Positions 27,991 through 62,870 of a stretch of 64,000 bases of DNA are shown piece after piece. Under the pieces are notes generated by a model that was given only the letters and a program-made list of their open reading frames with translations, ran no database searches and was not told where the DNA came from. Source of the DNA: Ostrea edulis (taxonomy: Eukaryota); NCBI RefSeq assembly GCF_947568905.1, contig NC_079171.1:71362001-71426000 (forward strand), in the 5' to 3' direction. The translations under genes were made by a program, and so were the position numbers. Position 1 is the first letter of the stretch, and each line of letters opens with the position of its first letter.

Positions 27991-28062
27991 GTATCTATAT
28001 AGCAATCAAATAAAAGAAATACCACAGACAGCATTCTCCAAGCTTCTGAATTTGCAAAGCCT
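27991..28062 (+). CDS. 72-nt single-LRR exon (copy 1) of an intron-rich LRR/LRRCT gene; encodes YLYSNQIKEIPQTAFSKLLNLQS(L)
   Basis: Acceptor catttgtttctctttcag|g and donor ct|gtaagt. Length is 72 nt, phase 2-2, with no stop. The translation fits the 24-aa extracellular LRR consensus xLxxNxIxxIxxxxFxxLxxLxxL. Confidence 0.93.
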
Positions 28063-28483
28063 GTAAGTATACTTTATCTGAAAATTTGAAAAGAAACGGA
28101 ATTCAAAATACTATATCCTTTTACAAAAATAACCGCTTTATGAAATGCAACAATGTGTATTTTGATTTACTAAAACATAAGAAATTATCTTTTATAACAT
28201 ATGCGCATGTATAAACAAACAAGTTTCTATATTTAATGCAGTATCGTTAATCTGGTAACGATAATCACCACATTGACATTGACAATCTTAAAGAATGTTA
28301 TTATCTATAGCATTATCACATTAAAGGACATATCTTGTGTTTTCAAAGTATACAGAATTGTATGCATTTTGTCTTCCTTATGCTTATAGAACTTAATTGT
28401 AATAATTCATTAGTAACCCTAACCCTGAAGTATTGCTAGAATTAGCAACAATATGGACTTAAATCTAAGCCCCGATTAAAAAA

Positions 28484-29261
28484 GTTATCTAGATAGGTAG
28501 TGAGGTGGTACAGTTATCTAGATAGGCAGTGAGGTGGTACATTTATCTAGATAGGCAGTGAGGTGGTACAGTTATCCAGATAGGTAGTGAGGCGGTACAG
28601 TTATCTAGATAGGTAGTGAGGTGGTACAGTTATCTAGATAGGTAGTGAGGTGGTACAGTTATCTAGATAGGTAGTGAGGTGGTACAGTTATCTAGATAGG
28701 TAGTGAGGTGGTACAGTTATCTAGATAGGTAGTGAGGTGGTACAGTTATCTAGATAGGTAGTGAGGTGGTACAGTTATCTAGATAGGTAGTGAGGTGGTA
28801 GAACTAGTTATCTAGATAGATAGTGAGGTGGTACAGTTATATAGATAGGTAGTGAGGTGGTACAGTTATATAGATAGGTAGTGAGGTGGTACAGTTATCT
28901 AAATAGGTAGTGAGGTGGTACAGTTATCTAGATAGGTAGTGAGTTGGTACAGTTATATAGATAGGTAGTGAGGTGGTACAGTTATCTAGATAGGTAGTGA
29001 GGTGGTACAGTTATCTAAATAGGTAGTGAGGTGGTACAGTTATCTAGATAGGTAGTGAGGTGGTACAGTTATCTAGATAGGTAGTGATGTGGTAGAACTA
29101 GTTATCTATATAGGTAGTGAGGTGGTAGAACTAGTTATCTAGATAGGTAGTGACGTGGTAGAACTAGTTATCTAGATAGGTAGTTACGTGGTAGAACTAG
29201 TTATCTAGATAGATAGTGAGGTGGTAAAACTAGTTATCTAGATAGGTAGTGAGGTGGTACA
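28484..29261. repeat. Minisatellite, 26 units of 29 bp (gttatctagataggtagtgaggtggtaca) and a 33-bp variant (..ggtagaacta)
   Basis: Counted order: 10x29, 1x33, 9x29, 5x33, 1x29. There are no spacers. Confidence 0.97.
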
Positions 29262-30201
29262 GTGTCATCATATGCGATCTTAATCAATCAGCTTTTTGTA
29301 AAAGTAGTGTAAGATATTTTCAAAAAACTCGGGTTTTAGGTGCCTAATTTATTTACCATGGATAACATTTATTTCCATGTTGACAACTTTCCCGAGTATT
29401 ATATCATTTAGCCACTAGTGCATACAAATAGTGACTCGAATGTAGCGAGGAAAGCGAGTATGAAATCTGCATTTGCGAGTAAATAATGTTTACATGGAAT
29501 CGTTGTCTAAACATTATTTGACAATGCCATTTCTTTAAACAACTGTAATTAGCGTTGCTGCTTTTCTAAAATAAAAAGTGCAATTATTATCAATTTTATT
29601 TTGAATAACTTAGATAGGCCTACATTACGATACGATTACTTATCATTGACAGCTAGGCCTATTGTCACAGGTGCATTTCGAAAGAAAAACAAAAAACAAA
29701 TAGATCAGAATGATCAAATTTATAGTGAAAATCACATTACTTTTAAATCATTCCATTTTATTAATCATTTTTTTTTTAAATCTACACAATGTTACTTAAG
29801 AAGTGGGAGCGCGGCGTGCTGTTGTTCTTACGTACGCGTTCCTTAAAAAATGAAAGCATTAGACTTCAATTAAGATTTGGAAAATATCATATTTTATGAT
29901 TTATAATTGAAAGTTCAATTGTCTTTTATCTTTAAATTTCTTTTTTTAAAACTACCAGCTGCTAGAAACTGCGATCACAAGTTATACTTATATGTTGTTA
30001 CAAGGTGAAAGTCAATTGGTGCGAGTGTGTATTGAATTTGAGAGCAGAATGGAAAGCATATACAGTTGCACTATATGTAACAGTGCGTAGCTTCGATATA
30101 ACAATTTTCTCGCAGTGTATCTGCGTCTTTGTCCAAGTGCTTGTTTGAAAAGTACAGGGACAATTTATACTGGGTTTCTAAGGCAAGGTCGTTGTGCCGA
30201 C

Positions 30202-31046
30202 TGTCGCAGGATGGACGCCAGGCATTAAACTATGAAGACGAGTTTTAAGGTTTATACTGTTTTAATACACTCAAGTTATACACAAATGTTCATCCTTTAC
30301 CGTTTTTCAAATAGGAGTCAAATGATTAAGGGATCTGTAACGATAAAATTTGTAAAAACAATTTATACAGATATACTGTTACAATACACACACAACACTT
30401 ACTTTACTTCACTTTACACAGACTACATTTTGCTGCAGGTACATTTTACACATTGCATTTTACTGCATACTTCACTATACTATACTTAATAGCATTTTAC
30501 TGCATATACACATTACACACTGCATTTTACTGCATATACACTTTACACACTGCATTTTACTGCATACTCTGGTGGTTTCCAATACTCTGGCATGAACAGT
30601 ACACCGTACATATACGTTTAGGTAAATACATATACATTTGAAGTAAAATAGCATATTAATGTATTGTATACTCACAATAACTATCACAGTAAATTCTAAT
30701 ATAAAGTATAAAGAACTTTGTACGTTGGCCATTTTAGGAATAAATGTGGAATGAAAATATTGAAGTAATGAGTAAACTTACCTAAGAAGTAGTGGACTCT
30801 GGTCACAAGGTATCAAAACTTGATGACTATTACTAGATAAAATACATGAATATCAATGCGGATAAACACGTCCGCACCCGGCAATTGCTACACCCAAACT
30901 AACTGCACGGGATTTAAATGTTCAAGCATACCTGGTGAACGATTCGCATACTATGGAAACACATTGAGATATTTAATTATTTAACATGATAAAGATCCTA
31001 ACATCTATGGAGCTATAATCGGGAAATATATACATTAATTGTAACA
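30202..31046. mobile_element. Solo LTR, 845 bp, with an internal ~30-bp degenerate tandem (about 30430-30565)
   Basis: TG...CA termini (tgtcgcagg...tgtaaca), a 5-bp TSD ccgac (30197-30201 / 31047-31051), and an empty site gtgccgacaaaac at about 47240 in copy 2. Confidence 0.88.
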
Positions 31047-32477
31047 CCGACAAAACATATTCACGTCTTGTCCCTCATACCTCCCTTCGAAAATTGAAAA
31101 AAAAAATCAGTCCAAATACTCTGTACTGACAGCAAGTACACCCTTAAACGGCACAACACACCCTAATAGAGTGTTAATTACTAGCCGTTAATGTGATAAT
31201 TGATTTTTTTGTCAATTAAATCTAATCTAAATATCTATGTCATGATGTATGTGAATCTAGACGGACAGAACCAATGCTGAATAACTCCGGTGCGAGCTGG
31301 ATAGAAGGTCGTCGAGGACAAAAATAAGAATATTGCTATTTCAAAGTTCTCCAAGAATTTATAACCGCACGAATTAGAGAGTCCATTGACAACGGAGGGG
31401 TAATTTCGTGCAATGACGGAATTTCTTCAGAACAAAGTAAATGCTGATTTCTTTGTACTAAACGACAGCACCATTGTTTAGGTAGACAGATAATGACAAT
31501 CGCACAATAAGTAATGTACCCATGATGCAGGGATATGAGTATTTACTTTACAGTGTTGGAAAATTGAAAGATTTCCGTCTAAATTTACAAATTGATGACA
31601 CAATAATGTCGCTTGTGCAACATCTGAGGCAACTGTCATTTAACGTTTGCAAAAAAAAAAAATCCATAGAAAGGTGATTGAAATAAAAATAAACATTATA
31701 AAGAAAATCAACATATCATCAGCATGATTTTCATCTCGTCGTACCGAAGAAAAAACACAGATATTTGAATCTGTGTTGATATGTGCCCTAGGAATACAAT
31801 TGTAAGGTTTTTAGGTTAGATTAGTTTTATTCCTGACTTATACCTCCCATACTCTGAATTATTGTTTAGGGTTAGGATTAGGGTTAATATCACAAATAGC
31901 CAAGCACTTACAATCACAGCGGATAGTCATCCCCTTTCATAATGACAATACTTTGAGGTTTGTAATGCAATCAGATATATATTTTTGAATGCCCCCTCCC
32001 TTATTTTTCACAGTATTAGTGAATTAAGATAATTTAATCAAGCTTTCTAATCCTCAAATAGTAACACAATCATACGCCCAACCCTATCCCCACGGAGTAA
32101 GTAAAATGAGGAATTTCTTTTTATTTGAGGCATTATACGACACCCTTACGAATTTTGTTGTTTTCATTCGTTCGTTCTTTTTTCTTGTTGTCTGTGCTTG
32201 TCAAATTTAAAAAAAACAACCATGTATCCAGTAATGCTCTGTAGTAATAGTACATGTTGTTAAGCTTCCTGAAAATTAACAAATGTAAAACGAAGCACCA
32301 TATATAAATGAAAAGTGTCTGTAAAAGACATGGCTTTCAGAAAGCAAAACTCTTCAAAAATGTGTTGGTGAAAGTACTCTATAAAACTTCTTCATCGTCA
32401 ACTTCCCATATTTATTTTTCAACTAATTTAAAGGTTCTATAAAATCAAGTTGCACATTTTCAAATATACATATTGTT

Positions 32478-32940
32478 TTATCATACTTTCATGTAAAATA
32501 CTCGAACTTGATTGGTCGAGAAGCATTGGAAAAAACATAGTGTTACCCTCTGAGAAAAAAAAAACCACGCCTCCCAGGGTGATAGTATCTAGCAACGAGT
32601 AACAGTACTTGACAACGGGTGATATTATAAAAATATATCACATGCGTCAAATTTATGCGCGTACGGTTTGCCGTAGATTGCTAGACGACGTCTTTTGAGC
32701 GTTTGTAATAAACGCGAGTACCCGCATCGAAATACGAAATATCACATGACAGTGATTGATCAAATGTCAACAGACGTAAGTTTTTCTACTTTCCAGTTTA
32801 CACAACATTCAGTATAATAAAACAAATATTGCATGTAGTTGAGGGTAACATTGGAATTTTCATCCCTCGAGAAACCATTGTCAACCTCGGGGTGAAAATT
32901 TTCAATGTTACCCTCAACTAGATGCAATATTTATATAATC
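32478..32940. repeat. Non-autonomous interspersed repeat ending in a long palindrome; superfamily uncertain (possibly Crypton-like); paralog at about 49398-49880
   Basis: Starts ttatcatactttcatgtaaaatactcgaacttgattggtcgag; inverted arms span 32824-32932. Confidence 0.55.
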
Positions 32941-33026
32941 TTACATTGTACATGTACCTCAACCTAGTGCACATATGTACGCATCACTACTACACTATAC
33001 ATTTTTGTACTACAACCACGGTATAT

Positions 33027-33612
33027 ATAGTTGAGCAAACACGGACCCCTGGGCAACACCAGAGGTGGGATCAGGTACCTAGGAGGAGTAAGCATCCCAT
33101 GTTCACGGGTCACACCCGCCGTGAGCCCTATATCCTGATTAGGTAAATGGAGTTATCCGCAGTCAAAATCAGTGTGCCATGAACGGCTTAACAATCGCTA
33201 TGAAACATGTCAGACAACATTTGACCCAATGCGAGGTTGTATTGACGAAATAGATCATTATAACGACCATAGAATTTGCAAATGTTGACTTCAATCGAGA
33301 CTGTTGAAACCCCTGCACCATCAACTTGTTTGTCAGTTCCTTACCTCGATTTAAAAACTGACTATACGCAAAACAAGCTCTTGCATATCGAATCAGTTGA
33401 GATATATAAACACCATATGCAGGTGATAATGGAATATTGTTACACAAATATGGGAAGTTGACGATGAAGAATCTGAAATCATCCCGTTTGTCATACAGTT
33501 GAGTTGTCAGTTTCCGTTATTGTCTACTTTCAATAAAATATCTAAGGAAGGAAGCAGAAGTGGACGACTCTGTGATGTCCTTTATTTCGAACTCACAGGG
33601 ATATATCAAATA
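33027..33612 (-). mobile_element. Naiad-type RT thumb and 3' UTR fragment, found only in duplication copy 1
   Basis: Track ORF 33169-33447 (IPLSPAYGVYISQLIRYARAC). It is not present at the equivalent position (about 49965) in copy 2. Confidence 0.85.
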
Positions 33613-36006
33613 TCAGTAATGAGATAGATAAGTGTGAAAGTAGAATACGTCTGAAGCAATATGACAAACTCGATATCATACAATGTTGAGAATCGTCAGC
33701 TACGTAATGTACTGTTAGGTGTGTCTGCTAGGCCCAAACTAACCAAATGATACCAATATTTAAAATACGATATTTCTTAATCAGAAATTCAAAACCTGAT
33801 TTAGAGGTAGAGGTAAAAGTTTGGAATAAAATTATTCATCTACCTGAATACAAATTTTGTTCTTATCAACGGAACTCAATTTTTACTTTAAATGTGACAC
33901 CCTCTTTCTCTACTGCTACGTCATGTTCTGAGCAATTTGTGGCTATCAAAACAAAAGAGAGTTAGTAGAAATAACACAGTGTGCATATGTTGTCGTGTCG
34001 CCAAACAACTTAGCCATTACATACAATTTTTCATTCGACGGAAATGTAGTCACTTTGTTTAAAATTTCCGAAATTCAGAGAACACCCAGTTTTTAACCCA
34101 TAGAAAAACGGGATGAGTTCAGCTTTTCCATGGTCAACTTCCCAGATTTATGTACCAGTATCCCATTACCAGTTGCATATGGTGTTAATATCACTCAACT
34201 GATTGAATACCCAAGAGCTTGTTCTGCACTTGGTCAGTTTATAAATCAAGGAGATTTACTGACAAACAAGTTGACGGTACAGGGGCTTCAACAGTATCGT
34301 TTAAAGTCAACATTTCAAAAAATATATGGTCGTTATGATGATTTAGTTTGCCTATACAACCAAACATTGTATTGAATGCAGTCAGACGTGTTTCATAACG
34401 ATTGTTAGACCGTTCTTGGCACACTGTTTTTGACTAAGGATAATTTCGATTACCTGATCAAGATAGACGGTTCATGGCTGGTGTGACCGGTCGACGTGGA
34501 ATGTGTATTTCTCCTAGGCACCTTGTCCAACCTCTGGTGTGCCCAGGGGTCCGCGTTTGCCCAACTCCCTATTTAGTATTCCTTATATGGCTTATACGAT
34601 TGATCACTATTCGTTAGCTTCACCTTTCACATAACTCCATTTCTAAGTTGAATGCTGCCGGATATGATATTAAGATTTGTAGAGGTAGTGGATATTTTGT
34701 CAGAGAAAATAAGATATGCATAAGGATTTCAATATTGAAGATGTCGAACAGTGATGAATCTCATAACTCATAACATACGAGAGGTGGAGGTTGGTGCCTA
34801 AGAGGAGTAAGCACCCTTTATAAACTGGCCACATCCGGTCAATCTCTTTGTCAGGTAAACGGAATAAATCATAGTCAAAATCAGTTCAGCAAGATGCAAT
34901 AAAACAAAAAGTGACCGACCAGTATTCCGACGGTCCGATAGTCCGACGGGCTGGTATGTCAACAAGTAAGGTGGCATGGACAACTTAATGAGTTTGTATA
35001 ATTTAATCATTAAATCATATAATAAAATGAATGTTGGGGTCGTCCCTTGGGCTCGATGAATATTGTACTACTCTGGCGGCTTAATCACTGTATTTACCTC
35101 AAAAACAGCAATAGTTGTGTAATATTACATTTCTGATCAATTTGTTAGTTAATGGAATCTCTTAACTATCTTCCAAAGCATTGCATAATAAGGGGAAATT
35201 TGGTTATAATTCTCATTTTCAGTATGAAAGCAGAGAAATGGAAAGTTGTTTTTAAAACAGCATTCCTCATATGTTTCAAACATCAGCTTATACCACAGGC
35301 ATGTGTTTGAGTAACAGGCATTCTGATGAGTTGGGTCTGGTAATAGTGGGGGGAATGATGTCCTACAGCGGAAAACCGAGAAGGGGGTCAGTAAAAGTCT
35401 TAGGTAAAACGTACAACTATTTACAGTATTAGCCGACATTATCTTCATATTTATGTTATAAACATTATCAATTTACTAGAAGTGGAATAAACATGTTGTT
35501 TATCGGCTGTATTTCCTGAAAATAAGTTCGATATAAACTAGTGTAAACATTTTCTTCGTTATGAACGCCATTTAATGGCAGGGCACTGTAATGTACAATC
35601 TCAATCGGTTACTTAGTGATATTTTGAGTTTTATTCCAAATTATTTTAGAGGGGATTTTTACCAGCATAATATACTTCATTTGCTTTTTTTTAACTGGGG
35701 CATATTTCACGCCTTATCGTAACAGCTTCTTCTACAATTAAGTCACTTCTTTTAAGGTCTTGACTCACCTGGATAGCGACACCGGGGCTCTGTTTTTCCT
35801 TTTTCGCTCTTTTTGCTTTTTAGGTTTTTTTATTTTTTCTTTCCCTTTTTTGCCAATAAACATGATTATTGCAAATATTATGAATGTATGGATGAATGTT
35901 ATTTTTACCAAATCATACCATTAATGTGAACACGTTTTTTTTTTTTTACTTTCTGTACACGACAGCTCATTGTAACATTCATTTGGCTTTGATTGATTAT
36001 ACAGAT

Positions 36007-36177
36007 TCAGGATATGGGGCTCACGGTGGGTGTGACCGGTGAACAGGGGATGCTTACTCCTCCTATGCACCTGATCCCACCTCTGGTGTCCAGGGGTCCG
36101 TGTTTGCCCAACTATATATTGTGTATTGCTTATAGGAGTCATGAGATTGATCACTGTTCGTTATCTTCACCTTGCAT
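36007..36177 (+). mobile_element. Young Naiad-type 3' tail, found only in duplication copy 1
   Basis: Near-consensus tail; empty site gattataaagattaaaacttac at about 54310-54330. Confidence 0.85.
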
Positions 36178-36689
36178 TATAAAACTTACAACACGTGTAG
36201 CAGTCTTTTACGATCGACCAAAATATCATTTATGTCTCATACTATTTCCTTTTCAAGAGGACAGCTCACCGAAGCTTGTTTTTGCTTTAAAAATCAACAC
36301 TGTAAAACTGTATGAGAATGAAATGTGATTTATTTTAGACAACAAATGACGAAGATGAAGGTTCATACAAAGAAGGGGGGAAATCAGCGATCCACGAACA
36401 CTGTCATAATCTTGCACAATATATCAACCCATCATTTCTGATTTCCCCCATATAGATAATTTCACAAATAAATATGGTACTGACCAGTTCAAACAGGGGA
36501 AAATCAGTAGATACATACAATGTAATTACAAAGGATTTCAACACATCTGTCCTGATTTTCCCCATACATGATTATCATAAATAACAAACAACGACTAGTT
36601 AAAATACAGACCTTGGAAACTTGTTCCAAAGTGTACAACAAGCAAAAAGAGGCGAACAAAAAGGGCGAAAGATATTATTAACAAATCAT

Positions 36690-36951
36690 ATTCAGAGCCA
36701 TCCAAGGTCCCATCCATTTGGTGCCGTGAATTGGGAGACATCTGTTCTGGGGGAACGTTTGAAGTTTGGGCCCGTGCCTGCTCCTGGACGATGTGTCTCG
36801 CCAGTTTGGCATAGTATATGGTGGGTGTCAACTCTGCAGGCTCTTGTTCCACAGACGGGTTGTGTGGTGTTACACTGTGACGGCTGGACTTCTTTGGAGC
36901 AGGCCGGGGTGAAGATGGTCGCTTCCTTGAAGTGGCTTTGCCCTTTGTCAT
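36690..36951 (-). pseudogene. Possible truncated gag/ORF1-like N-terminus (MTKGKATSRKRPSSPRPAPKK...IYYAKLARHIVQEQ)
   Basis: Basic low-complexity start followed by an I.Y.KLA..I helix, which resembles ORF1 starts of tyrosine-recombinase retroelements. This is pattern recognition only. Confidence 0.35.
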
Positions 36952-37555
36952 GTTTGCTAAAACATAATTAACCACAGTAAATCTGGGCATCAAGGAAAAA
37001 GGGACATGTCAACTTCCAACAAACCTGATGAGTGAGAAAGTTGGCAAACTAATACTACTGTAAACACCAAACAGTATACCACATGACATCCAGCATAGAT
37101 ATAAACAGTTCGCCTGTATATGAAAATGGACTTGTACATCGCAACAAGGGCTATTGTTCATGATAACTGAATTTTACTGAAATTCAATAGCCCAAAGCAT
37201 ACCTCTAGGCACAATAATATATAGATAATATAACGTGATAGAAAGAAACTAAATGCCAAATCTGGAGGCTGTTTTTAGTTATCAAAGAATATAGATATAG
37301 TACCATAAGTAGGTATCTGGGAAATATGCAACACTTTTCTAACCCGTTTCGTAATAGTAGCGGCATACCGCTAACCTTTCCCTAATTTTAAATCATACTC
37401 ATGTTAATTGATAACAATGGAGTATCATACTAAAATGCCTCTCAGAGTAACAGACATTGCATTTAATGTATCTCTATAGCACAGGAATTGCACTCTGCCT
37501 TGCTGCTACCTTAAAATATAGACATATATATAGTTTATATCTATATAACTCTGCA

Positions 37556-38215: not shown

Positions 38216-38327
38216 TTGAAGATATTGAAGAATGCTTTATTAAAGTGTTCCAGACACCAATAACACCCATGGCCTACATAGGCAAGGCCTAAAATAACTC
38301 AAGTTTGCATTTAATTTAGTTTTATGT

Positions 38328-51500: not shown

Positions 51501-54500
51501 TATTGTGACTTGTAACATGTCTAATTTTTGCATTGAATATGCAAGATGCAACGATTTTTGCACACACGAACTTGAATCTAGCCTGAAAAACATATTTTCT
51601 GTTGAAGCCAGAACTTGCTCCCCTAACTTTCCTTTGGCACTGAAGTTCACATGTCACACAAATCAAACATCTTTCACTTAAAAACCTCGGAGTATCGTGC
51701 CAATGATGAAATTTTTATGTACGGAAACCCTGTTTATGCAAATGAGTCCATTGTGAAAGTAACCATACGTGTAGATTAGGGGCGATATCAATATCACAAT
51801 ATAATATGGATGTATGCAATATAAAGAATTGAAACTTTTTCAGTATCAAAGATAATTAATATAACCCATTTGACAGAAACTTTTACGCGATTGCAGTTTA
51901 CCGTTTGACAGCGGTGGTAAATAACGAAACAATATTTTGACATTTCCAACCACAAAATAACTGTAGATATGTACGTCATGACCTTCGTCATGACGTGATT
52001 TTCATTGTGACGTCGTGCAATGTGCCAGTGCGCTAAAGTATATTTATGTACAGCACTGGTATTAAGAATTTTATGGGGAAAGCCTTAACTCAACAGCGTA
52101 CAATATTGATAATCGTCAGGTACGTCATGTAATGTTACCTGTGTCTGCTAGTCCCAAACTAACCAAAGCATACCACTATTTAAAATACGGTATCGCTTAG
52201 TCAGAAATTCAAAACCTGATTTACACGTAGGGGTAAAAGTTTGGAATAAAACTACTCATCTACCTGAATACAAATTTTGTTATTATCAAGGGGACTCATT
52301 TTGGACTTTAAATGTGACACCCTCTTTGTCTACTACTACGCCATGTTCTGAGTAATTTGTTGCTATCAGAACGAAAGAGAGTTAGTAGAAATAACATAAT
52401 ATACATAAGTTCTCGTATCGCCAAAAAACTTAGTCACTATATAAAATGTTTCATTCGATGGAAGCAATTTCATACTTAAGTGCTTGCTTTGCACTTGTTC
52501 AGTTTATAAATCAAGGAGAGCTACTGACAAACAAGTTGATGGTACAGGGGTTTCAACAGTATCCTTTAAAATCACCATTTCAAAAACTCTATGGTCGTTA
52601 TGATGATTTAGTTTGCATATACAACCAAGCATTGTATCGAATGCTGTCTGACGTGTTTTATAACGATTGTTAGACCGTTCTTGACACACTAATTTTGACT
52701 AAGGACAATTCCGATTACCTGATCAAGATAGACGGTTCATGGGTGGTGTGACCGGTCGACATGGAATGCGAATTTCTCTTAAGCACCTTGTCCAAGTCTG
52801 GTGTGCCCAGGGGTCCGCGTTTGCCCAATTCTATATTTAGTATTCCTTATAGGGCTTATACGATTGATCACTATTCGTTAGCTTCACCTTTCACAGAACT
52901 TTATTTCTATGTTGAATGTTGCCGGGTATGATATTACGATTTGTAGAGGTAATGAATAGTTTGCCAGAGAGAATGCGTTATGTATAAGGATTTCAATGTT
53001 GAAGATGTCGAACAGTGATGAATCTCATAACTCTGAAGGCATACATACTAAAGAGTTGGGCAAACACAGACATACGACAGGTGGAAGTTGGTGCCTAGGA
53101 GGAGTAAGCACTGTCTATAAACCGGCCATACCCGGTCAATATCTTTGTCGTGATCAGGTAAATGGCATAAATCGTAGTCAAAATCAGTTCAGCAAGATGC
53201 ATGAAAACAAAAGGTGACCGACCAGTATTATCACGGTCCGATAGTCCGACGGGCCGGTATGTCAGCAAGTAAGATGGCATGGATAACTTAATGAGCTTGT
53301 ATAATTTAATCATTCAATCATATAATAAAATGGATGTTGCTGGGTTTTTGTCAGTCAATACGATGAATTAGTCATCTTCGAAGTATAGTATTCACCTCGT
53401 CCTCTGAGCTCGGTGAATATTGTACTACTCAGACGGCTTAATTACTGTATTGACATCAAAAACAACAATATTTGTGTAATGTTACATTTCTGATCAATTT
53501 GTTAGTCACTGGTAGCTGTTAATTATATTCCAACAAAAATGCATAATAAGGGGAAATTGGGTTATAATTCTTATTTTCAGTAAGAAAGCAGAGGAATGGA
53601 AAGTTGTTTTTAAAACAGCATTCCCCAATATGTTTCAAACATCAGCTTATACCACAGTCATATGTTTGAGTAACAGGCATTCTGATAAGTTGGGTCTGGT
53701 AATAGTGGGGAGAATGATGTCCTACAGCGGAAAACCGAGAAGGGGGGTCAGTAAAAGTCTTATGAAAAACTTACAAATAGTTACAGTATTAGCTGACATT
53801 ATCTTAATATGTAATTTAGGCAATTCCTGAAAATAAGTTTAATATAAACTAGTGTTAACATTTTATTCGTTACGCACGCCATTCAATGAAATGGCACTGT
53901 AATTTGCAATCCCAATCGGTTACTTAATGATGTTTTGATTTCTATTCCAAATTGTTTTAGAAGGGATATTTACCAGCATACTATTTCATTTCTATTCTGT
54001 TTTAATAGGGTATATCTCACGCCTTATTGTAACAACTTCTACAATTAATTCACTTCTTATAAGGTTTTGACTCACATGGATAGCGACACCTGGGCTCTGT
54101 TTTTCCTTTGTTTACTCTGTTTGCTTTTTAGGCTTCTTTTTTTCTTTTATTTCCTTTTTTTGCCAACAGACATGATTATTGCAAGTATTATGAATGTATG
54201 GATGCATGCTATTTTTGCCAAATCATACCATTAATGTGAACACTTTTTTTTTTTTAATTTTACTTTCTGTACGCGACAGCTCATTGTAACATTCATTTTG
54301 TTTTTATTGATTATAAAGATTAAAACTTACAACACGTGTAGCAGTCTTTCACCATGGGCCAAAATATAATTTACCTCATGATCTTGATAATAATTTCATA
54401 GCCTACTAAATTCATATTCTTACACAAAGACCTAGTCAGTTAGATCTCAAAATGATGTAAGAATGTTGTGATATCAGGAAGTAAGACACGGAGAGACTTA

Positions 54501-54846
54501 AACATACATGTAACATTGAAAGGCAATTATTATTTATTAAAGAAGGTGTGTGTTTTGGCCGGTTTTGAAAGCAATCCTGTTTAAAGCTTGATGATGTCTG
54601 TCCGTCCGTGGAAAAAAAATGGTTGAATTTCTATGCAATGTTAAGGGTAATTTTCGACATATTTTACCTGTAATTCATCAGTTAGCAGTTTCAATTTCCA
54701 TAAATACCGGGTTTATCTAATTTAGTTTACACTTGAATGATTTTGGTCAGAAATTGATTGTACGATTTATAATCAAGCCGTGCCGATTTTGGCGGTTTCT
54801 GGTAATTTCCATAAAATAATGCCTGAAATGAATAAATTTTAACTCT

Positions 54847-57800
54847 TTTTTTTTTTTTTTTTTTTTTTCAAGTTTCAAGATTTTTATTTATGAAACAAGA
54901 CAAAAACATATACAAATATACAAAACAAATGAAATACATGTATAAGATACAATGTGTATACGATATGGTTATTATTTTACCATGGAATCAAAATAGATAC
55001 AGTATATGTCAAACAATTGTAGTTATTAATTTACATCAACATAATTTCAAGTGACGGAATAATACTGCGTAAGAAACATATTTGGCAGTGTGTGTATAAT
55101 AAAGATAAGTTTTTAATTGTTGTTTTTCAAAAACGCCCCGCTGCCACAATGAGTCCACACATATCACGACAGTTCATATCCGACTCATTGGGCAGCTCTA
55201 TTAGAGGACTGACCCTCTGAATAGTGGCTTCATATATAACACAAGTATATATAATACACAGATATACACATGTATACATACATGTGCGTGCATAGATATA
55301 ATAGCAGTAGTAAAAATGTTTAAATTTTATGTTAAAAATTTTGATATAAAGAATATCTATAGATTGGATACAAAATTTTGAAAAAACTTCTGTTCTTTTG
55401 TTTTATATAAAAACCTGAGAACTTGACAGTGCGATCTCAAGTATTCCTTGATGGAACGAATAACAAAATCACTCGTCTCATTAACCTGCACAACTCTACA
55501 ATACATCTTACATTTATAAATTCTAAATGCAATAAAAGAAAGCAAATAGTTATATATCTTTATCAACTCAGTATTATCCAAATAAAACCCAACAGCAATA
55601 TGTTTCCAAGTAATTGTGAAATTAATACAGGTACTTGCGACCTTCCATATATGTCGTACATTAATACAATCAAAAATAAGGTGTTTTGTGTTTTCGATTT
55701 CATTTCTACACAGTTTACACTTATTTGTTACAGTGTTGTTCCATTTGCTAATAAGGAGATTATTACTCAATAAGTTGTGTATTAGTTTATAATTAAACTC
55801 TGCTAAAGATTTGTCTTCAATGTATTTAACTTTCAATAAAAATATTGATTCCCATTCCTTTTTATCTGTTATTTGGAACTCTCTACTTAACCTTGTAAGC
55901 GAGGGTTTTTGGAATTTATGCTTTATCAAAGTAGAATAGAAAATTTTAGTTTTATGTTGTAAACATAAATTTTTATCAATATTTTTGGTTTTAATGTAGG
56001 GAATTTTAGAAAAATCATATCCGAGTTCAAATTTTTTGAAAATATGTCTTATCATCTTATACTCGCATAGCCAGTTCGTTTTCTTAGTAAGACAATCATA
56101 AATTTGTTTACCTGATTTTAATAGCCCATCCTCATTAAAAATGTCTTTAACATATAAAATTCCACTTTTTATCCAATCATCAAAACATATTGATTTACCT
56201 TTGAAGAGAAAATTTGCATTTGACCATATTGGCTGAAGAAGGAATTTTTCAGTGGAGTTAAGAGTTTGGTTTGTGTTGTCTTGACAAAGGTTGAAGCAAG
56301 AAAACACCTGTTTATAAAACACTGGAACATTTTTAAGAATGCCATAATTGTTAGTTGATGTTTCAGAAGTCTTAACTAAATAATCAATGTCAAGATTTAA
56401 AGTTTTGCTGAAACTTTCTGCATATTTTTTAATGATATGATTACTTGTAATAAGGCGTGGAATCCACATGGCCTTTAGGGCTTTAAGTTTAGACTCTATA
56501 TCGACTACACCTATCCCTCCATCTTTAATATCCCCTATCAATGTGTTCCTTTTGATTCTATCTTTTTTATTCCATAAAAAATTAAATATCAACCTATTGA
56601 TATCTTTTATAAACTTAGGATCGGGTAATTCTAAAATGCTTGCAACATAAGTCAATTTTGATAAAGCCAATGAGTTAATGATTGTACATTTTCCAAATAA
56701 TGATAGTTTTCTTCTCTTCCATGATTCAAATAACATTTCAATTTCGTGATATATTTTCATCCAGTTTTTATTGTAACATTCAATCTTATCTTGACCTATA
56801 TGAATACCTAAACATTTTACGGATTTCCTAGTTACCTTTATTCCCTCTACTGTTTCAAGCTGGTTTCTCAGGTTTCCGAGTAAAATACATTCTGTTTTTG
56901 TGAAATTTATTTTTGACCCTGCTAATTCACAGAAACTTTTAATGGTGTTTATTGCATGTTTTAGAGAATCGGTATCACTTAAAGCCAGTGTCATGTCGTC
57001 TGCATGTTGAATATTTTTAATTTCATTTTCTAAGTTTTTATTTTTAAAACCGTGAATCGAATTATTTGATTTGATTTTATCTGATAGAATTTCTGCAACA
57101 AATAGGTATAAAATCGCAGAAATTGGACAGCCTTGCCTAATTCCCCTGTGCATCTGGCATGTTCTAGAGATCCAGCCATTATTTTTTAAACGGAAGATAG
57201 GATTTTTATAAAGTATTTTAATCCATTTAATAAAATTAATTCCAAAATTAAATGTTTCTAGAGTTTTGAACAGAAAATTCCACTCAACTGAATCGAATGC
57301 TTTCTCAAAGTCGAGAAATAATAATAAGCCCTCTTGATTATTGTTTTCCCAGTAATCAAAAATATCTAATATCAATCGTGCGTTGCTTCCTATAAATCTT
57401 CCTTTTATATATGCTGTCTGTTCGTTACTTATGTAATCATCGACAACTTTTTGTAAACGACGAGCAAATATGAATGCAATTATCTTGTAGTCTGTATTTG
57501 TAAGGCTAATAGGTCTGTAATTTTTTAATAGGGATTTCTCTCCTTTTTTGTGAATTAATGATATGACAGCAAGTCGTTGGGAAAAAGACATTTCATTTGA
57601 TAAAAAAATTTCTTTAAGCATTCCAAAAAAAAGTTCCGATAACTGATCCCAAAAGCATTGATAAAATTCAGTTGGTAAACCGTCTAGACCTGGCGATTTA
57701 TTGTGTTTCATACTCATAACAGCTTCTCGACATTCATCTAAAGTTGGAAATTGGTCACAATTATTTCTCGCACTCTCAGATAAACATTTAATATTGCTAT

Positions 57801-58307
57801 TATTTAAATAATTCTGAATGTCAGAAGAATTTATATTTTTAGTATCATACAGATTTTCATAAAAATTACACATTTCACTCAAAATATCTTCATCAGTAGT
57901 TAAAGTTTCTTTTCGTTCGTTCTGTAGTTCATTAATAACATTCTGTGATTGATGCTTTTTTTCTAGACTTAAAAAATACTTGGTGTTTTTTCTCCTTTGT
58001 CGATCCACTTAGCGCGTGACCTAATTTGAGCTCCTTTTGCTTTTTTATCATACAAGTCATTTAATTGCGACTCCAAGTCTCTCTTTTTATTCATATCAAT
58101 TTGGAGATGTGGGAGAGATTATATTTCATTTATTTCTTTTTCAATGTTTGAAATTGTATTCTTAAGATTTTTCTGCGATTTGATTGAAAAATGTATAGAA
58201 AGTAACTTAATTTTATGTTTTAAAATTTCCCATTTTTGCGTGTTTGTTCCTTGTGGGTTTTTTATATTTTGTATAATATTTACAATTTGGTTTTTATATT
58301 CGCTACT
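54847..58307 (-). mobile_element. 5'-truncated L1/Tx1-like non-LTR retrotransposon with poly(A) tail and 10-bp TSD
   Basis: Poly-T from 54846 with AATAAA about 20 nt before the tail on the minus strand. TSD ttttaactct at 54837-54846 / 58308-58317. The site at about 39785-39800 in copy 1 is empty. Confidence 0.93.
55357..58008 (-). CDS. ORF2 remnant: non-LTR reverse transcriptase plus C-terminal Zn knuckle; endonuclease lost by truncation
   Basis: KSPGLDGLPTEFY, YRPISLTNTDYKI, DFEKAFDSV, GIRQGCPIS, QHADD and CKLC..E...HLIFDC. The upstream part (GAQIRSRAKW) lies in another frame and contains a stop. Confidence 0.9.
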   Translation of the reverse strand: MDRQRRKNTKYFLSLEKKHQSQNVINELQNERKETLTTDEDILSEMCNFYENLYDTKNINSSDIQNYLNNSNIKCLSESARNNCDQFPTLDECREAVMSMKHNKSPGLDGLPTEFYQCFWDQLSELFFGMLKEIFLSNEMSFSQRLAVISLIHKKGEKSLLKNYRPISLTNTDYKIIAFIFARRLQKVVDDYISNEQTAYIKGRFIGSNARLILDIFDYWENNNQEGLLLFLDFEKAFDSVEWNFLFKTLETFNFGINFIKWIKILYKNPIFRLKNNGWISRTCQMHRGIRQGCPISAILYLFVAEILSDKIKSNNSIHGFKNKNLENEIKNIQHADDMTLALSDTDSLKHAINTIKSFCELAGSKINFTKTECILLGNLRNQLETVEGIKVTRKSVKCLGIHIGQDKIECYNKNWMKIYHEIEMLFESWKRRKLSLFGKCTIINSLALSKLTYVASILELPDPKFIKDINRLIFNFLWNKKDRIKRNTLIGDIKDGGIGVVDIESKLKALKAMWIPRLITSNHIIKKYAESFSKTLNLDIDYLVKTSETSTNNYGILKNVPVFYKQVFSCFNLCQDNTNQTLNSTEKFLLQPIWSNANFLFKGKSICFDDWIKSGILYVKDIFNEDGLLKSGKQIYDCLTKKTNWLCEYKMIRHIFKKFELGYDFSKIPYIKTKNIDKNLCLQHKTKIFYSTLIKHKFQKPSLTRLSREFQITDKKEWESIFLLKVKYIEDKSLAEFNYKLIHNLLSNNLLISKWNNTVTNKCKLCRNEIENTKHLIFDCINVRHIWKVASTCINFTITWKHIAVGFYLDNTELIKIYNYLLSFIAFRIYKCKMYCRVVQVNETSDFVIRSIKEYLRSHCQVLRFLYKTKEQKFFQNFVSNL

Positions 58308-59839
58308 TTTTAACTCTATTAATTAAACTTTTTGATGATGGTCAACATGTCGGACTATCGGATCGTCGGACTACAGGTCCGTCTGTCTACCGGAACGTCG
58401 GACTATCGGACCGTCGGAACAAAAGGGTGTGTATTCTAGTCATTCATGTTTAATAAAGTACACTTGATTTGGTAACCACACAGGGTACTTGAAAATACTT
58501 TGATAACAGCGCCCACAACATGTGATATTTTGTTTGGTTGTAAGATTCATTATTGCTGTTGTATTTTATATAACTTTTCCTAAAAGTCAACATATGTTAA
58601 TCCGAATCGTATTCCAAGTGTCCATTCAAAAATAAAGTTCTTCAAAATCACGTTTTGATTTTAAACAGATCCAATATGCAAAATAGAGGGGTAAAATAAA
58701 CCTGAGTTACAGTACCTATACTAGATTCTAAAACTTCAGAAAACGTTCGAGAGATGTAGTGCAGGATCCAGAATATTTTATACTAAGCCCCAAATATTTC
58801 CTCCCCACGAAAACAGCAAATGTCGTGACGGTGTAACTTTAACATCAGATAGACGTGCCGTAAATCTAATTGTAAGTTTAAAAAAAGATTAGTAAATCTG
58901 AAATTATATTTTACTCAAATCAACATATCTTGTGATATATCGTGTAAACAAAAGTGAATTTCGATCGCTCGAACGTCGATCTTTCGAGGTTCTCGATATT
59001 ACGCCCCCGAGTTTTCCTCTCTACTAAGGAAATGCACTATTTGTTTCTCGAGAATTTGATCTCTTAAAGTACTTGGTATCTAAAAGTGAAGTTTGGGTCC
59101 CGTAGAACATGATTTTAATGGTTTCACTCGAGAATTTTCGAACTTTTGGTAGCGTATATGTACCACCACTCCATATATAATTAACAGTGAATGTCTAGGG
59201 CTAGTCTGTCCGTGGTAATCAGGTGTTCGCATAGGTAACGCATCCCTGCTTTTCCATGTGGGGTGAATAATTAATTGCTTAACTGGTTTCAACCCTTCAA
59301 GTGCAATTCGTGTGATAAAATAATTCGAATATACATAACATTTACCAGTTGTTTGAACTTAATAATATAGTAATCTTGATATTAGAATTTGAAGACAGGC
59401 CAAAGAAACGTCATTAATTATTAGAATGTGTGTTTTGTGCAAAGTCACTATGACATGTGGCGATTATGCTTGGTGTACTTAGTTATTAAAGAATTGTATA
59501 ATGTATGAAGCATTGTAGATATGTACATGTGTCGGTACATTTACATGTACTGGTCGATCGGGGATGTTCACTCCTCTTACACCTGATCAAACGCTTCGTG
59601 TGCCCAGGGTTTCGTATTTGCTCAACTCCCTATTTTATATTGAAACGCGCATTGATGCAGTTTTCCGTCCATTCTTTTTTTTTTTAAATTAATGTATGCA
59701 TCAAAAACAATTATAAGTTTAATTTCTTTAAATAATAATCGAAACTCTTTCTCAAAGGAACATGATGATATTCAATACGGCGATATGAATATTGATTTAT
59801 CTACCAAAGCTGAATATTATTTGACTGTACATATTTATT

Positions 59840-59941
59840 GTTATTTCGGAATTCAAACATGTCGGTTGAGCATCACAAAAGATACATTATTTGTCGAAAT
59901 GCGCTTCTGGTTCATCACAATTGGCACCGCATAAGTTTTAC
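59840..59941 (+). repeat. Retrozyme-family fragment with a decayed hammerhead (core CAAAAGA); duplicate of 41330-41429
   Basis: gcatca-caaaaga-tacattatttgtc-gaaatgcgcttc-tggttc at 59870-59913. Confidence 0.72.
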
Positions 59942-61206
59942 AATATGACAAATCTTTGATATCTCGAACAATAATCTGTGGGACACCAACCAATGACACG
60001 TGAAGATAAGGGACAGTGATCAAACTTAAAACTCATATAAAACTCATATAAGCAATACAAAATTGAGAGTTTTTTTAAACACGGACCACTGTATATACCA
60101 GAATGGGATCAGGTTCCTAGGAAGAGTAAACATCCAGTCCCTGTCGACCGGTTACGCCTGCCGTTAGCCCTATACCGCCCTGTCAGAGCTTGTATCCCCT
60201 ATAGACTCCCCAATGTGACACCTTTTTATATTGCACAACGCTTCAGCCAATATTGTAGCATTATTGCTTATATTCAAGAAAGGACAGGTATAATCGGGCA
60301 GCAGAGGTACATACTAGAAGGGTAAATGAAATGCGAACATAACGAATACTGATCAATCTGATAATTATTATCAGCAATATTTAATAGAGAATTGGGTAAA
60401 CACGGACTATGGACATGTCAGAGGTGGGGCTATGTGCCTAGGAGGAGTGATGCGCATGTATCCTTAGTAATTTACCTTACAATGAATCTAACTGTTTGTA
60501 TCACATCAAATACGCTTTCAAATGTTGCAAGATATACAAATATCATGCCGAAACTTTAATTAATACTTGCTTTCAAGCTGCAATTTTGCATTTGGTCTCA
60601 TTTGAAGCCCATTCTATGTTCTCCATCGTGATCAACTACCTACCTTTTGCAAAAGCACACCAAGGATACCTCAGGATTATTTATTTCTAAATGCAGAGCT
60701 TCCGGTGAAATTACAAACACCAACCTGCAGTCGACTAGACACAACATACTGTTGAATAAAACTCATAATTTAACTATATCACTTAGTCAGCAAACATATT
60801 GCTGAAAGGTCTGAGTTTATTGAATTCCAGAGTTATAGAATTTAAACATATTTCACCTTGATGTAAACCGTTTCCCTTGATGTAGATCCCTTTCAGAATA
60901 TCAATGCATTGACCCATATGTTAATATCGGGAGATACATATTCCGCTACATACGTTGCCGTGACTTGCTTGTGTTGTTTTCCATGTAACATTACAATTGC
61001 TTTGCTCGCAAATGCCTAGATGTATCCCGGTGTATGTCATTCACCTTTTGGTGGATGCAATTTAAACTCAATTATCACATGTTCAACATCCGAAGAAAAT
61101 ACATACTATTACTACATATCTACTTTCACTGATGTGATTAGAAGAATCATAAACATTAGAATTTGGAATCCGTCTACGGAAGGTTTCTTCGAAATGGTTC
61201 GTTATA

Positions 61207-62508
61207 CAGTGAAACTTCTCCAAACCGGCCCCTCAGAAAACCGGTTCTCCCTGAATATCGGCCGATTTTCAAAGTCCTGGCAGAAACCTTACCATTTCCT
61301 TACAAAGAAAGTCTCACAAAACCGACCACCCCTGAAAACCGGACATCGGCCACTTTTTAAAGTACTATTGTTAACAAACATGTGTAAATTACCCTTATAA
61401 TACCGACCACTATTTGAAGACCAGACAATTTTGACCAGAGGGGTGATTAAGACCGGCCAGGTGTGAAAAATGACTGACCTACCGGCCAGGTGGGAAATTA
61501 TCGACCGGAGGTGTGAAAATCACGAGTGGCCTCTATAAGTTCTATAGTTTACCTGTGCTCTCCAGGGTGTTAATTGGTGCTTGGCTAATCCAAGAGACCC
61601 TTTCAAATTTCTGTACGAAATGTTATAAACAGATATGCATATATTGAATGAATACAATCAATACGCCATATTGTTGCACCATGGATATAAGCGGTAGTTA
61701 ATAAACAACAAACCCATGACTGTTAATGATACTTTTCAATAGATAAATGAGTTTTGGGGGGTTTCAATAGACTTAAAATTCCTAAGAAGCATCTAAATTA
61801 AAATTATATATTTACTACTGTACCTTTCAAAAATGTCAAAACAAATTTGTTAACGATATAAGCAATGGACGTAAACAGGATTTTTATAGGTAAGAGAAAT
61901 TCCAATAATAGGCCTCTGTGTTTTCTTTATGTATCTTGTTATAAATTTTTAAATATATATATTAAATTAGATGATTGCAGCAATACTCTTTTTTGTAATA
62001 ATTACCTGTAGGTACAAGCGGACTAGTTTGATCTCCACCGATAATTGATCATAGATCCCCATATAAAAGTGAGCAGTACCTACTCTGTGTATCAATTGCA
62101 GCAATCAAATGGCTATGTGTTTGTGTTGTTTATTAAAACATAAGCCGAAATTCTATATAAATGCTGCTAGTCTACAAATTTCAATACATATATCAAATGC
62201 AGTTTTATTTAAACGGACTGTTTTCCATTATCTATGCATGTCAATATAAAAATGTTTATTCATGTTTAATTAGTTTTAGTGCTATAAATTGAAAATAAAC
62301 ATGTTAGTAAATTTTTGTTTTATTTCCAATAGTGAAATAATAGTCCTTGAACACCATATTATTTGGTTTGTGGTATGTCAATGGAATATTTAATAAAAAA
62401 TGAGCTGAAATGTCTCTATAAATGCTAAATTCTCGGTATACCGGCCACTCCTCTAAACCGGCCGTTTTTGTCGGTCCGACAGCTGGCCGGTTTAGAAAAG
62501 TTTCACTG
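61207..62508. mobile_element. Tc1/mariner-pogo-type non-autonomous element, 1302 bp
   Basis: Terminal inverted repeats cagtgaaacttctccaaaccggcc / ggccggtttagaaaagtttcactg, TA duplication on both sides, and internal accggccaggtg.gaaa repeats at about 61450-61520. No transposase is visible. Confidence 0.88.
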
Positions 62509-62697
62509 TACATGAAATACTTTCTACGTTTGATTATTCGTGTTCTTTCTTTTGTCTTTTTTATAAAGTTTATCCAAAGAAATTTAAACGCCTCATATTA
62601 AATGCATCCTACCATAGCTACATAAACATATAAACCTCGCCGGGCATTTGAATGCTACCATATTTGTACTGACCCTTTGATATGAAATATTTTCCAG

Positions 62698-62870
62698 GTA
62701 TATACATAATAATCCGTTGATCTGCGACTGTAATATGAAATGGCTGCTGTACTTCCGTCGCATGCAGAACTTGAATATGGAATTTTTCGGGAGGGTCCCA
62801 ATATGCAGTGACCCGGTAAACATGAAAGGAAAACGGCTCGACATACTTCAGCTGTCAGATATACAGTGTG
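62698..62870 (+). CDS. LRR C-terminal cap (LRRCT) exon: YIHNNPLICDCNMKWLLYFRRMQNLNMEFFGRVPICSDPVNMKGKRLDILQLSDIQC
   Basis: Acceptor aaatattttccag|g and donor g|gtaaga, 173 nt, phase 2 to phase 1. It has the classic NPxxCDCxxxWL...CxxP...GxxL..L...C four-cysteine cap and joins the 45329-45400 exon in frame. It overlaps track ORF 62717-62935, which runs on into the intron. Confidence 0.93.

What the first reader, a model, noticed from the sequence alone, without database searches (positions are those of the whole stretch)
27991..62870. Hidden LRR gene growing by one 72-nt repeat per 17-kb duplication
Seen: two symmetric phase 2-2 exons of exactly one LRR each and an LRRCT exon splice in frame to ...YLYSNQIKEIPQTAFSKLLNLQSL-YLYNNQIKEIPQTAFSNLLNLQNL-YIHNNPLICDC..., across introns of 17,266 and 17,297 bp. 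Only 317 of 64,000 bases are host coding sequence. Known: phase-symmetric LRR exons can be added or skipped without a frameshift, and LRR-LRRCT ectodomains are typical recognition surfaces. Inference: this locus changes solenoid length by very large segmental duplication, and the two cassettes may be spliced alternatively or mutually exclusively, giving a modular receptor system in an invertebrate. The N-terminus and the domains after LRRCT are not visible, so the family cannot be named.
Basis: partly seen in the sequence, partly recalled or inferred. Interest (0 to 1): 0.8.

Follow-up and report, generated by a model that had tools for sequence, protein, structure and literature searches.

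The report
Oyster LRR-kringle gene, doubled exon
Two near-identical 72-base exons, each coding one leucine-rich repeat, do sit 17 kb apart in the giant introns of a flat-oyster gene from a large LRR-kringle family, but the two copies are closest to different sister genes, so the extra repeat came from reshuffling among paralogs, and no RNA data show how the exons are spliced.

Summary
E1 (27991-28062), E2 (45329-45400) and the LRRCT exon (62698-62870) have AG/GT borders, open frames and the stated phases. Two colinear 17.3-18.5 kb units carry E1 and E2 and meet at a junction found nowhere else in the genome.

The window is Ostrea edulis C8:71,362,001-71,426,000. The exons belong to a gene with at least three more 72-nt LRR exons upstream (introns 30-61 kb). 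Downstream lie a divergent kringle exon and a helical cysteine-bearing tail. RefSeq (LOC130049782) annotates only LRRCT-to-stop, so the LRR part is indeed hidden. At least 25 paralogs lie on C8 61-76 Mb, and only this one shows two "last LRR" exons.

The units are not sister copies. U1's 5' part resembles the paralog at 73.39 Mb and its 3' part those at 68.5 and 72.4 Mb (98-99%). U2's 5' part, including E2 (72/72), resembles the paralog at 67.94 Mb (99%). U2's 3' part resembles 73.39 Mb again (99%). Repeat gain therefore involves exchange among paralogs, not a simple local doubling.

Alternative or mutually exclusive splicing has no support. No RNA run was found, and the three runs laid were DNA. 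An assembly or haplotig chimera is not excluded. The scan has met one-repeat-per-exon oyster LRR genes before.

The parts
27991..28062 (+). E1: 72-nt exon coding one LRR (phase 2-2). It differs from the family consensus by three amino-acid changes (residues 4, 17 and 23).
45329..45400 (+). E2: 72-nt exon coding one LRR (phase 2-2). It shares 68/72 bases with E1 and is 72/72 identical to the exon of the paralog at C8 67.94 Mb.
62698..62870 (+). LRRCT cap exon, 173 nt, entering in phase 2 and leaving in phase 1. The RefSeq model XP_056003764.1 starts at a Met inside it.
24504..33022 (+). Unit 1, 5' part, including E1. Its nearest relative is the single-unit paralog at 73.39 Mb (95-98%); it is 93-95% identical to unit 2.
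33023..41824 (+). Unit 1, 3' part. It is 98-99% identical to the paralogs at 68.5 and 72.4 Mb (96-97% across the shared SGNH-type insert) but only 89% to the matching part of unit 2. It starts at an inverted copy of a repeat of about 600 nt.
41819..41824 (.). Junction between the end of unit 1 and the start of unit 2, with ACGAA/ACGGA microhomology. No other place in the genome spans it.
41819..45820 (+). Unit 2, 5' part, including E2. It is about 99% identical to the paralog at 67.94 Mb, 96-97% to 74.22 Mb, and 93-94% to unit 1 and to 73.39 Mb.
45821..46311 (.). 29-nt-period satellite (also present at 28483-29263 in unit 1). The 99% similarity to the 67.94-Mb paralog ends here.
46311..49965 (+). 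Unit 2, middle part. No close relative was found; it is 94-95% identical to several paralogs and to unit 1.
51200..64000 (+). Unit 2, 3' part, plus the unique stretch before the LRRCT exon, that exon and the sequence beyond it. Where queried (51200-54840 and 60348-64000) it is 99% identical and colinear with the 73.39-Mb paralog, including a shared 1.3-kb repeat (61203-62513). For 54841-60347 the match is inferred from coordinates, which also place the LINE insertion at the same spot.
54846..58313 (-). Truncated LINE with an 883-aa reverse-transcriptase ORF. Copies 99-100% identical occur on many chromosomes, so the element is very young. It lies inside unit 2.

Best explanation
The gene spans more than 170 kb. 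It has at least five single-repeat 72-nt exons (genome 71,263,856; 71,293,577; 71,354,360; E1; E2), then the LRRCT exon, a phase 1-1 divergent kringle exon, and four exons coding a helical cysteine-bearing tail that ends in a stop at about 71,432,534.

It is one of at least 25 paralogs spread by large segmental duplications over C8 61-76 Mb. The protein is most likely secreted (inferred), with the LRR arc as its binding surface.

This copy has one more terminal LRR than the 12 other paralogs in which this exon type was found, because a 17-kb exon-plus-intron unit is present twice, joined end to start at a unique microhomology junction. The two units did not arise as simple sisters. Segments on either side of the junction are about 99% identical to different paralogs, and both outer parts resemble a third. 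So the doublet was made, or later overwritten, by non-allelic exchange among family members. The candidates are template switching or a fusion between two paralog copies at the junction, plus homologous exchanges at shared repeats.

Shown: the exon anatomy, the family, the unique junction and the mosaic ancestry. Inferred: both exons are normally spliced in, because their splice signals are identical, so the solenoid is one repeat longer; and the order and mechanism of the exchanges.
For: Exons, frames and splice sites. Genome position and family size.

Upstream LRR exons share the same acceptor and donor style. Downstream exons match XP_056003764.1 (LOC130049782) at 100% in the LRRCT, kringle and last exons.

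Kringle evidence: Pfam E 1.3e-5, PDB hits to HGF (3.7e-6) and ROR2 (6e-5), and six cysteines.

All 12 'last LRR' exons compared (E1, E2 and those of ten paralogs) are intact, with a usable 72-nt exon and AG/GT borders. The scaffold residues L, N, I and F never vary; variation sits at residues 3, 4 and 23.

The paralog model XP LOC125680655 (P0040) joins one LRR exon to its LRRCT exon in the same phase.

Only this gene has two such exons within 40 kb. The junction is unique in the genome.

Mosaic ancestry. Tree: (U1, P73.39) 86/90 and ((U2, P67.94) 100/99, P74.22) 100/99. The switch points fall at a repeat copy (33023), at the 29-nt satellite (45821-46311), and in the interval 49965-51200, which abuts a high-copy repeat at 51200-52100.
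Against: - No RNA evidence of any kind was obtained. The one run search found three runs of unrecorded type, and their contigs cover the introns, so they are DNA.
- RefSeq models of this gene and of a sister start inside the LRRCT exon. The public annotation therefore does not link the LRR exons to the tail.
- The 5' end (signal peptide, LRRNT) was not reached.
- The 99% identities equal the allelic divergence of this species (heterozygosity 1.02%, PMC9679249). Parts of the mosaic could therefore be misplaced haplotigs.
- The paralog loci could not be fetched whole, so breakpoints come from hit tables. Only the best candidates were scored in each search.
Confidence: 0.6

Rival explanations
1. 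Simple in-place tandem duplication of one 17-kb unit, with both copies then diverging on the spot.
For: The two units are adjacent, colinear and head to tail, and they meet at one microhomology junction.
Against: - U2's exon region is sister to the 67.94-Mb paralog (about 99%) and U1's to the 73.39-Mb paralog.
- U1's 3' part is 99% identical to the paralogs at 68.5 and 72.4 Mb but only 89% to U2's 3' part.
- U2's 3' part is 99% identical to the 73.39-Mb paralog.
- None of those paralogs carries the junction.
Confidence: 0.12
2. Assembly artefact. The doublet is a chimera of uncollapsed haplotigs, or of reads from several paralogs, joined at repeats.
For: The segments are about 99% identical to other loci, which is the allelic level in this species. 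Three of the four switch points lie at or beside repeats. In three other samples the contigs at several U2-private sites show only the paralog letter.
Against: - The window has no N and no scaffold gap.
- The central junction is a unique 5-nt microhomology join, not a repeat, and assemblers do not normally create such joins.
- Some U2-private letters are present in independent samples. One X3 contig covering 44168-44290 has no mismatch and carries the private C at 44260.
Confidence: 0.1
3. The LRR exons are relics. The expressed gene is only the LRRCT-kringle-tail part, as RefSeq annotates it.
For: XP_056003764.1 and XP_056002670.1 start at a Met inside the LRRCT exon. No library protein joins this family's LRRCT to an LRR array, apart from the one-LRR model P0040.
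Against: - A protein starting in the middle of an LRRCT would lack a signal peptide, yet it carries a six-cysteine kringle (inference).
- The 36 nt of the LRRCT exon before that Met are open and code the conserved cap motif, including its paired cysteines.
- All 12 'last LRR' exons compared, and three much older exons, keep frame, splice sites and scaffold residues, while their flanks have drifted to 62-68% identity.
- P0040 joins an LRR exon to its LRRCT exon.
Confidence: 0.1
4. E1 and E2 are alternative or mutually exclusive cassettes that give protein variants from one gene.
For: Both are phase-symmetric 72-nt exons, so any combination stays in frame. They differ at three residues, one of them (S/N at exon residue 4) at an x position of the LxxLxLxxN strand. 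Inverted copies of a roughly 600-nt repeat flank E1 (16203-16791 and 33611-33023) and could favour skipping.
Against: - There are no RNA data.
- The acceptor and donor sequences are identical, so neither exon is intrinsically weaker.
- A 17-kb intron gives no steric exclusion, and there is no frame penalty for including both.
- No docking or selector arrangement was looked for beyond the repeat map.
Confidence: 0.08

Closest known systems
Slit-type LRR domains (LRR array with a cysteine cap)
   Same: The best matches to the LRRCT exon outside the family are Slit-like proteins with LRR_8, LRRNT, LRRCT, EGF and laminin G domains (36-40% identity). One repeat per 72-nt exon is also the Slit gene design (my own knowledge, not tested here).
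   Different: No EGF or laminin G part follows. After the cap come a kringle and a helical tail. Only one LRRCT was seen per gene.
Kringle modules of HGF, plasminogen and ROR2
   Same: There are six cysteines in a 72-residue exon. Sequence matches to solved HGF and ROR2 kringles reach E 3.7e-6 to 6e-5. The exon is phase 1-1, the usual class for shuffled modules (my own knowledge).
   Different: The Pfam score is below the curated cut-off (25.9 against 34.3 bits). I know of no described protein that puts a kringle after an LRRCT, and none turned up in the searches made.
Clustered LRR gene families reshaped by unequal exchange and gene conversion (plant R-gene and RLP clusters, for example)
   Same: Many paralogs sit in one chromosomal region. 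Ancestry is a patchwork of segments, repeat number changes, and variation is concentrated at x positions of LxxLxLxxN.
   Different: Here each repeat is its own exon with introns of 17-61 kb, so the exchanged units are tens of kilobases of mostly intron.
Lamprey VLR cassette copying
   Same: Single LRR modules with flanks are copied between related loci.
   Different: Everything seen here is in germline sequence between complete genes. Nothing suggests somatic assembly or an incomplete germline gene.
Oyster one-repeat-per-exon LRR genes already met in this scan (s1-274687, s1-274718, s1-279151)
   Same: Same genome and same design of 72-nt LRR exons copied together with their introns. Binding-face codons change faster than the introns.
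   Different: This case adds the LRRCT-kringle tail, the cluster of at least 25 copies on C8, and the finding that the newest doublet is a mosaic of different paralogs.

Membership tests
Leucine-rich repeat protein with C-terminal cysteine cap | LxxLxLxxN(x)L repeats about 24 residues long | tested here: met
   All five 72-nt exons fit the pattern. Pfam LRR_8 matches single exons only weakly (E 0.003-0.007), as expected for 23 residues.
Leucine-rich repeat protein with C-terminal cysteine cap | LRRCT with a CxC motif and two further cysteines | tested here: inconclusive
   The exon reads NPxxCDC...C...C, and its best library matches align to the LRRCTs of Slit-like proteins. The Pfam LRRCT model itself did not hit the 57-residue exon.
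Slit | Four LRR domains followed by EGF repeats, laminin G and a cystine knot | tested here: not met
   The exons after the LRRCT code a kringle and a helical tail that ends in a stop.
Kringle domain | About 80 residues with six conserved cysteines, recognised by the Pfam model | tested here: inconclusive
   The six cysteines are present and there are PDB matches to HGF and ROR2 kringles. Pfam gives 25.9 bits, below the 34.3 cut-off. The AlphaFold model is unusable (pLDDT 37).
Simple tandem segmental duplication | Two adjacent colinear copies with one novel junction | tested here: met
Simple tandem segmental duplication | The two copies are each other's closest relatives | tested here: not met
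   Tree; segment identities.
Mutually exclusive exon cluster | Transcripts carry one and only one of the duplicated exons | not testable with these tools
   No RNA run was served. The three runs laid are DNA.
Membrane receptor | A transmembrane segment or anchor after the ectodomain | tested here: not met
   I saw no obvious long hydrophobic stretch on reading the 288-residue RefSeq product, which ends 170 residues after the kringle. No transmembrane predictor was run, and the N-terminus is unknown.

The most novel reading that the evidence does not exclude
The terminal LRR cassettes of an oyster-specific family of at least 25 secreted LRR-kringle genes are continually exchanged, gained and lost between paralogs in the germline. 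Haplotypes would then differ in repeat number and in binding-face residues. That would be a population-level diversified recognition family built from 17-kb exon-plus-intron units.
Probability: 0.25. Interest if true: 0.6.

Novelty: new variant of a known kind. Interest (0 to 1): 0.4.

Why it matters
It shows how a solenoid protein can change length when each repeat is a separate exon inside very long introns. The unit of change is tens of kilobases of mostly intron, and the newest unit here was assembled from pieces of different paralogs.

It also exposes an annotation problem. RefSeq describes this gene and its sisters as 287-288-residue proteins that begin inside a cap domain. A whole LRR-kringle family of at least 25 genes is therefore missing its binding domain in public catalogues of oyster immune and recognition genes.

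The LRRCT-kringle combination seems to be undescribed. If copy number and cassette content vary between oysters, the cluster at the end of chromosome 8 would be a candidate region for variation in recognition, for example in disease studies.

Tried and rejected
- **RNA evidence.** The single run search, made with E2 alone (only 4 sampled words), returned three runs of unrecorded type. Laid on 43000-48000, their contigs cover introns throughout, so they are DNA. They cannot separate unit 2 from the 99% paralog, and the junction was not in the laid stretch.
- **Joined model.** Exons were searched one by one by reference.
- **Fetching paralogs.** Later searches gave tables only, so the gene's 5' end and whole paralog loci were not read.
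- **Structure.** The AlphaFold model of the RefSeq product from a 3-row alignment was unusable (pLDDT 37), so no fold search was run.
- **The tail.** Pfam gave nothing for the tail. The Atlas feature search points weakly (0.85) to nematode DUF19/CPG4-type domains, which is only a lead.
- **Other look-ups.** The look-up of encoding contigs does not serve this genome. Three literature searches found nothing on an LRR-kringle family or on these LOC numbers.
- **Selection on E1.** E1 has three private amino-acid changes and no private silent change. With about 1.2 changes expected from the flanks this is not significant, so I dropped the idea.
Full report

Yes. E1 (27991-28062) and E2 (45329-45400) are each 72 nt. 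Both follow an identical ...tttctctttcag acceptor and precede GTAAGTAT. Both are open in the frame that leaves one base at the start and two at the end, which is phase 2 on each side. They share 68 of 72 bases.

The third exon (62698-62870, 173 nt) has an AG acceptor and a GTAAGA donor and reads as an LRR C-terminal cap with a CDC motif and two later cysteines. The introns measure 17,266 and 17,297 nt. No other place in the window matches the module (next best tblastn E 0.56). The window contains no N.

**2. The duplication as a structure**

A self-comparison gives two colinear head-to-tail units, 24504-41824 and 41819-60347. They are 89-95% identical, with several transposon-sized indels. At the join, the end of the unit (...AACATAACGAA) meets the start of the unit (ACGRATGGGAAAGG...), so there is a 5-nt microhomology and no shared repeat.

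**3. Where and what**

The window is contig C8:71,362,001-71,426,000 of an 895-Mb genome. Proteins from it carry Ostrea edulis RefSeq names on a 77,126,126-bp record, the same length as C8.

*Upstream.* In the 100 kb fetched upstream, three more 72-nt LRR exons with the same splice style lie at 71,263,856, 71,293,577 and 71,354,360.

*Downstream.* The LRRCT exon is followed at +4.2 kb by a 216-nt phase 1-1 exon. With the G left by the LRRCT exon it reads D-C-R-I-P-G-K. Four more exons follow, ending in a stop near 71,432,534.

*RefSeq.* XP_056003764.1 (LOC130049782, 288 aa) matches this locus at 100% in the LRRCT, kringle and last exons. That model begins at a methionine inside the LRRCT exon, so the public annotation lacks every LRR.

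*Domains.* The first downstream exon is a divergent kringle. It has six cysteines, a Pfam Kringle match at E 1.3e-5 that falls below the curated cut-off, and matches to solved HGF and ROR2 kringles at E 3.7e-6 to 6e-5. The last 170 residues match no family and are predicted helical in a model too poor to use (pLDDT 37). An Atlas feature hit to nematode DUF19/CPG4 clusters at 0.85 is only a lead. I saw no obvious membrane-spanning stretch on reading the tail; no predictor was run.

**4. The family**

The LRRCT exon with its flanks has 29 matches in the genome, and the tail exons have matches at the same places. About 25 lie on C8 between 61 and 76 Mb. Others lie on C8 at 33 and 46 Mb and on C7, C4, C2 and C5.

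Several sets of copies give identical scores at distances of megabases, so the cluster grew by large segmental duplications.

In a library of 1.84 billion representative proteins, the LRRCT exon finds only two close relatives. One is a 73-aa fragment and the other a 287-aa O. edulis model that also starts inside the cap. All remaining hits are Slit-like proteins at 31-50% identity. A word search with the 287-aa model finds only O. edulis proteins.

One of these, P0040 (LOC125680655, on another chromosome), does join one LRR exon to its LRRCT exon in the same phase.

**5. Are the LRR exons alive?**

E1 with its flanks has 14 matches at 88% identity or more, one per paralog except in this gene. 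Twelve of them were read: E1, E2 and the exons of ten paralogs. In all 12 the exon has a usable 72-nt reading with AG and GT borders and an open frame. One paralog has a 30-nt local duplication after the first donor.

Eleven of the 23 residues vary, most of them in a single copy. The L, N, I and F scaffold residues never vary. Residue 23 has six states, residue 4 has three and residue 3 has two. Across the exon border these are positions 3, 8 and 7 of LxxLxLxxN, the x positions of the strand.

Pooled pairwise distance is higher in the exon (8.7%) than in 600 nt of flank (5.6%), and pN/pS is 0.37. The pairs are not independent and the exon is short, so these figures are only descriptive.

The three older upstream exons keep frame, sites and motif while their flanks are 62-68% identical to E2's. 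I read this as exons under constraint on the scaffold with free or favoured change at the x positions. This agrees with earlier notes of this scan on other oyster LRR genes.

**6. The two units are not sisters**

Searching the genome with pieces of each unit gave the following.

| Window segment | Nearest relative(s) | Other comparisons |
|---|---|---|
| U1 24504-33022 | paralog with exon at 73,387,373: 95-96% before the exon, 98% after it | 93-95% to U2 |
| U1 33023-41824 | paralogs at 68.5 and 72.4 Mb: 98-99% (96-97% across the shared SGNH-type insert) | 89% to U2's matching part |
| U2 41819-45820 | paralog at 67.94 Mb: about 99% (39 differences in 2.8 kb; E2 72/72) | 96-97% to 74.22 Mb; 93-94% to U1 and 73.39 Mb |
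| U2 46311-49965 | no close relative | 94-95% to several paralogs |
| U2 from 51200 through the LRRCT exon to the window's end | 73.39-Mb paralog: 99% and colinear where queried | shares a 1.3-kb repeat; a LINE at the same place is inferred from coordinates only |

A maximum-likelihood tree of 1.6 kb around the exon puts U2 with the 67.94-Mb copy (100/99), then 74.22 Mb (100/99). It puts U1 with 73.39 Mb (86/90).

The junction itself is unique. Every other match stops at it from one side or the other. The switch points lie at an inverted copy of a 600-nt repeat (33023), at a 29-nt satellite (45821-46311), and between 49965 and 51200, next to a high-copy repeat at 51200-52100.

**7. What this means**

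Seen from the single-unit gene at 73.39 Mb, this gene carries an extra block, 33023-49965. The block holds the junction and E2 and is built from at least two other paralog lineages. Seen the other way, the 73.39-Mb gene looks like a two-unit gene collapsed by exchange between U1 and U2. I cannot tell which came first.

The 99% tracts end exactly at the junction on both sides. One event that joined the unit end of one paralog copy to the unit start of another is more economical than two long conversion tracts that both happen to reach the junction. Such an event could be template switching, or a deletion that fused two copies. Further homologous exchanges at repeats are needed under any model.

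What is shown is the mosaic. The mechanism is inferred.

**8. Caveats**

- *Allelic-level identity.* The species' heterozygosity is about 1% (PMC9679249), so '99% to another locus' is also what a misplaced haplotig would show.
- *For an artefact.* Three of the four switch points lie at or beside repeats.
- *Against an artefact.* There is no gap in the window, and the central join is not a repeat. DNA contigs from three other samples include pieces identical to unit 2 over U2-private letters, such as 44168-44290 in X3. However, those letters could equally be alleles of the 67.94-Mb locus.

**9. Splicing**

Nothing could be learned from RNA. The single run search returned three runs whose contigs cover the introns. 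From sequence alone the two exons have identical signals, and nothing enforces exclusivity. I therefore expect both to be included, with mutually exclusive use unlikely.

**10. Verdict**

This is a real but ordinary kind of event: exon-plus-intron duplication in a clustered LRR family. Three points add interest. RefSeq annotates only the part of the gene after the LRR array. The LRRCT-kringle architecture seems to be undescribed and was found only in this species in the libraries searched. The newest doublet is a patchwork of paralogs.

The scan has already met the one-repeat-per-exon design in this genome (s1-274687, s1-274718, s1-279151).

Noticed in passing
window 54846-58313 (-): Truncated LINE with an 883-aa ORF (RVT_1 and zf-RVT). 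Copies 99-100% identical occur on most chromosomes, so the element has been active very recently. From coordinates, the same insertion appears to be present in the 73.39-Mb paralog.
   Followed up: partly
It was therefore already inside the unit when those segments were copied.
   Followed up: partly
L002:1598-1828 (genome 71,437,598-71,437,828, +): A second, more canonical-looking kringle reading frame (35% identical to this gene's kringle) lies 5 kb beyond the stop codon. It is probably part of a neighbouring gene.
   Followed up: no
window 28483-29263 and 45821-46311: A satellite of 29-nt period sits 420 nt downstream of each LRR exon, with different copy numbers in the two units. The high similarity to the 67.94-Mb paralog ends at it.
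   Followed up: partly
window 16203-16791 (+) and 33023-33611 (-): Inverted copies (91%) of a roughly 600-nt repeat flank E1. Further direct copies lie at 25692-26385, 43011-43712 and 52462-53033. Such pairs could favour exon skipping or circular RNA. This was not tested.
   Followed up: no
window 8081-8771 and genome 71,280,250-71,280,967: Old copies (74-79%) of the intron stretch that lies 0.3-1.1 kb upstream of E2, with no LRR exon after them. Similar copies occur upstream in many paralogs. They may be relics of units that lost their exon.
   Followed up: partly
genome C8 68,488,663-68,495,353: The paralog at 68.5 Mb seems to carry, just upstream of its 'last LRR' unit, a partial extra unit lacking the exon and its near flanks. 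This is inferred from hit coordinates only, but it would be another sign of unit gain and loss in the family.
   Followed up: no
window 45306, 45307, 45314: In the polypyrimidine tract before E2, the reference and the 67.94-Mb paralog read A, C, G. All contigs laid from three other samples read G, T, T, as do unit 1 and the other paralogs.
   Followed up: partly
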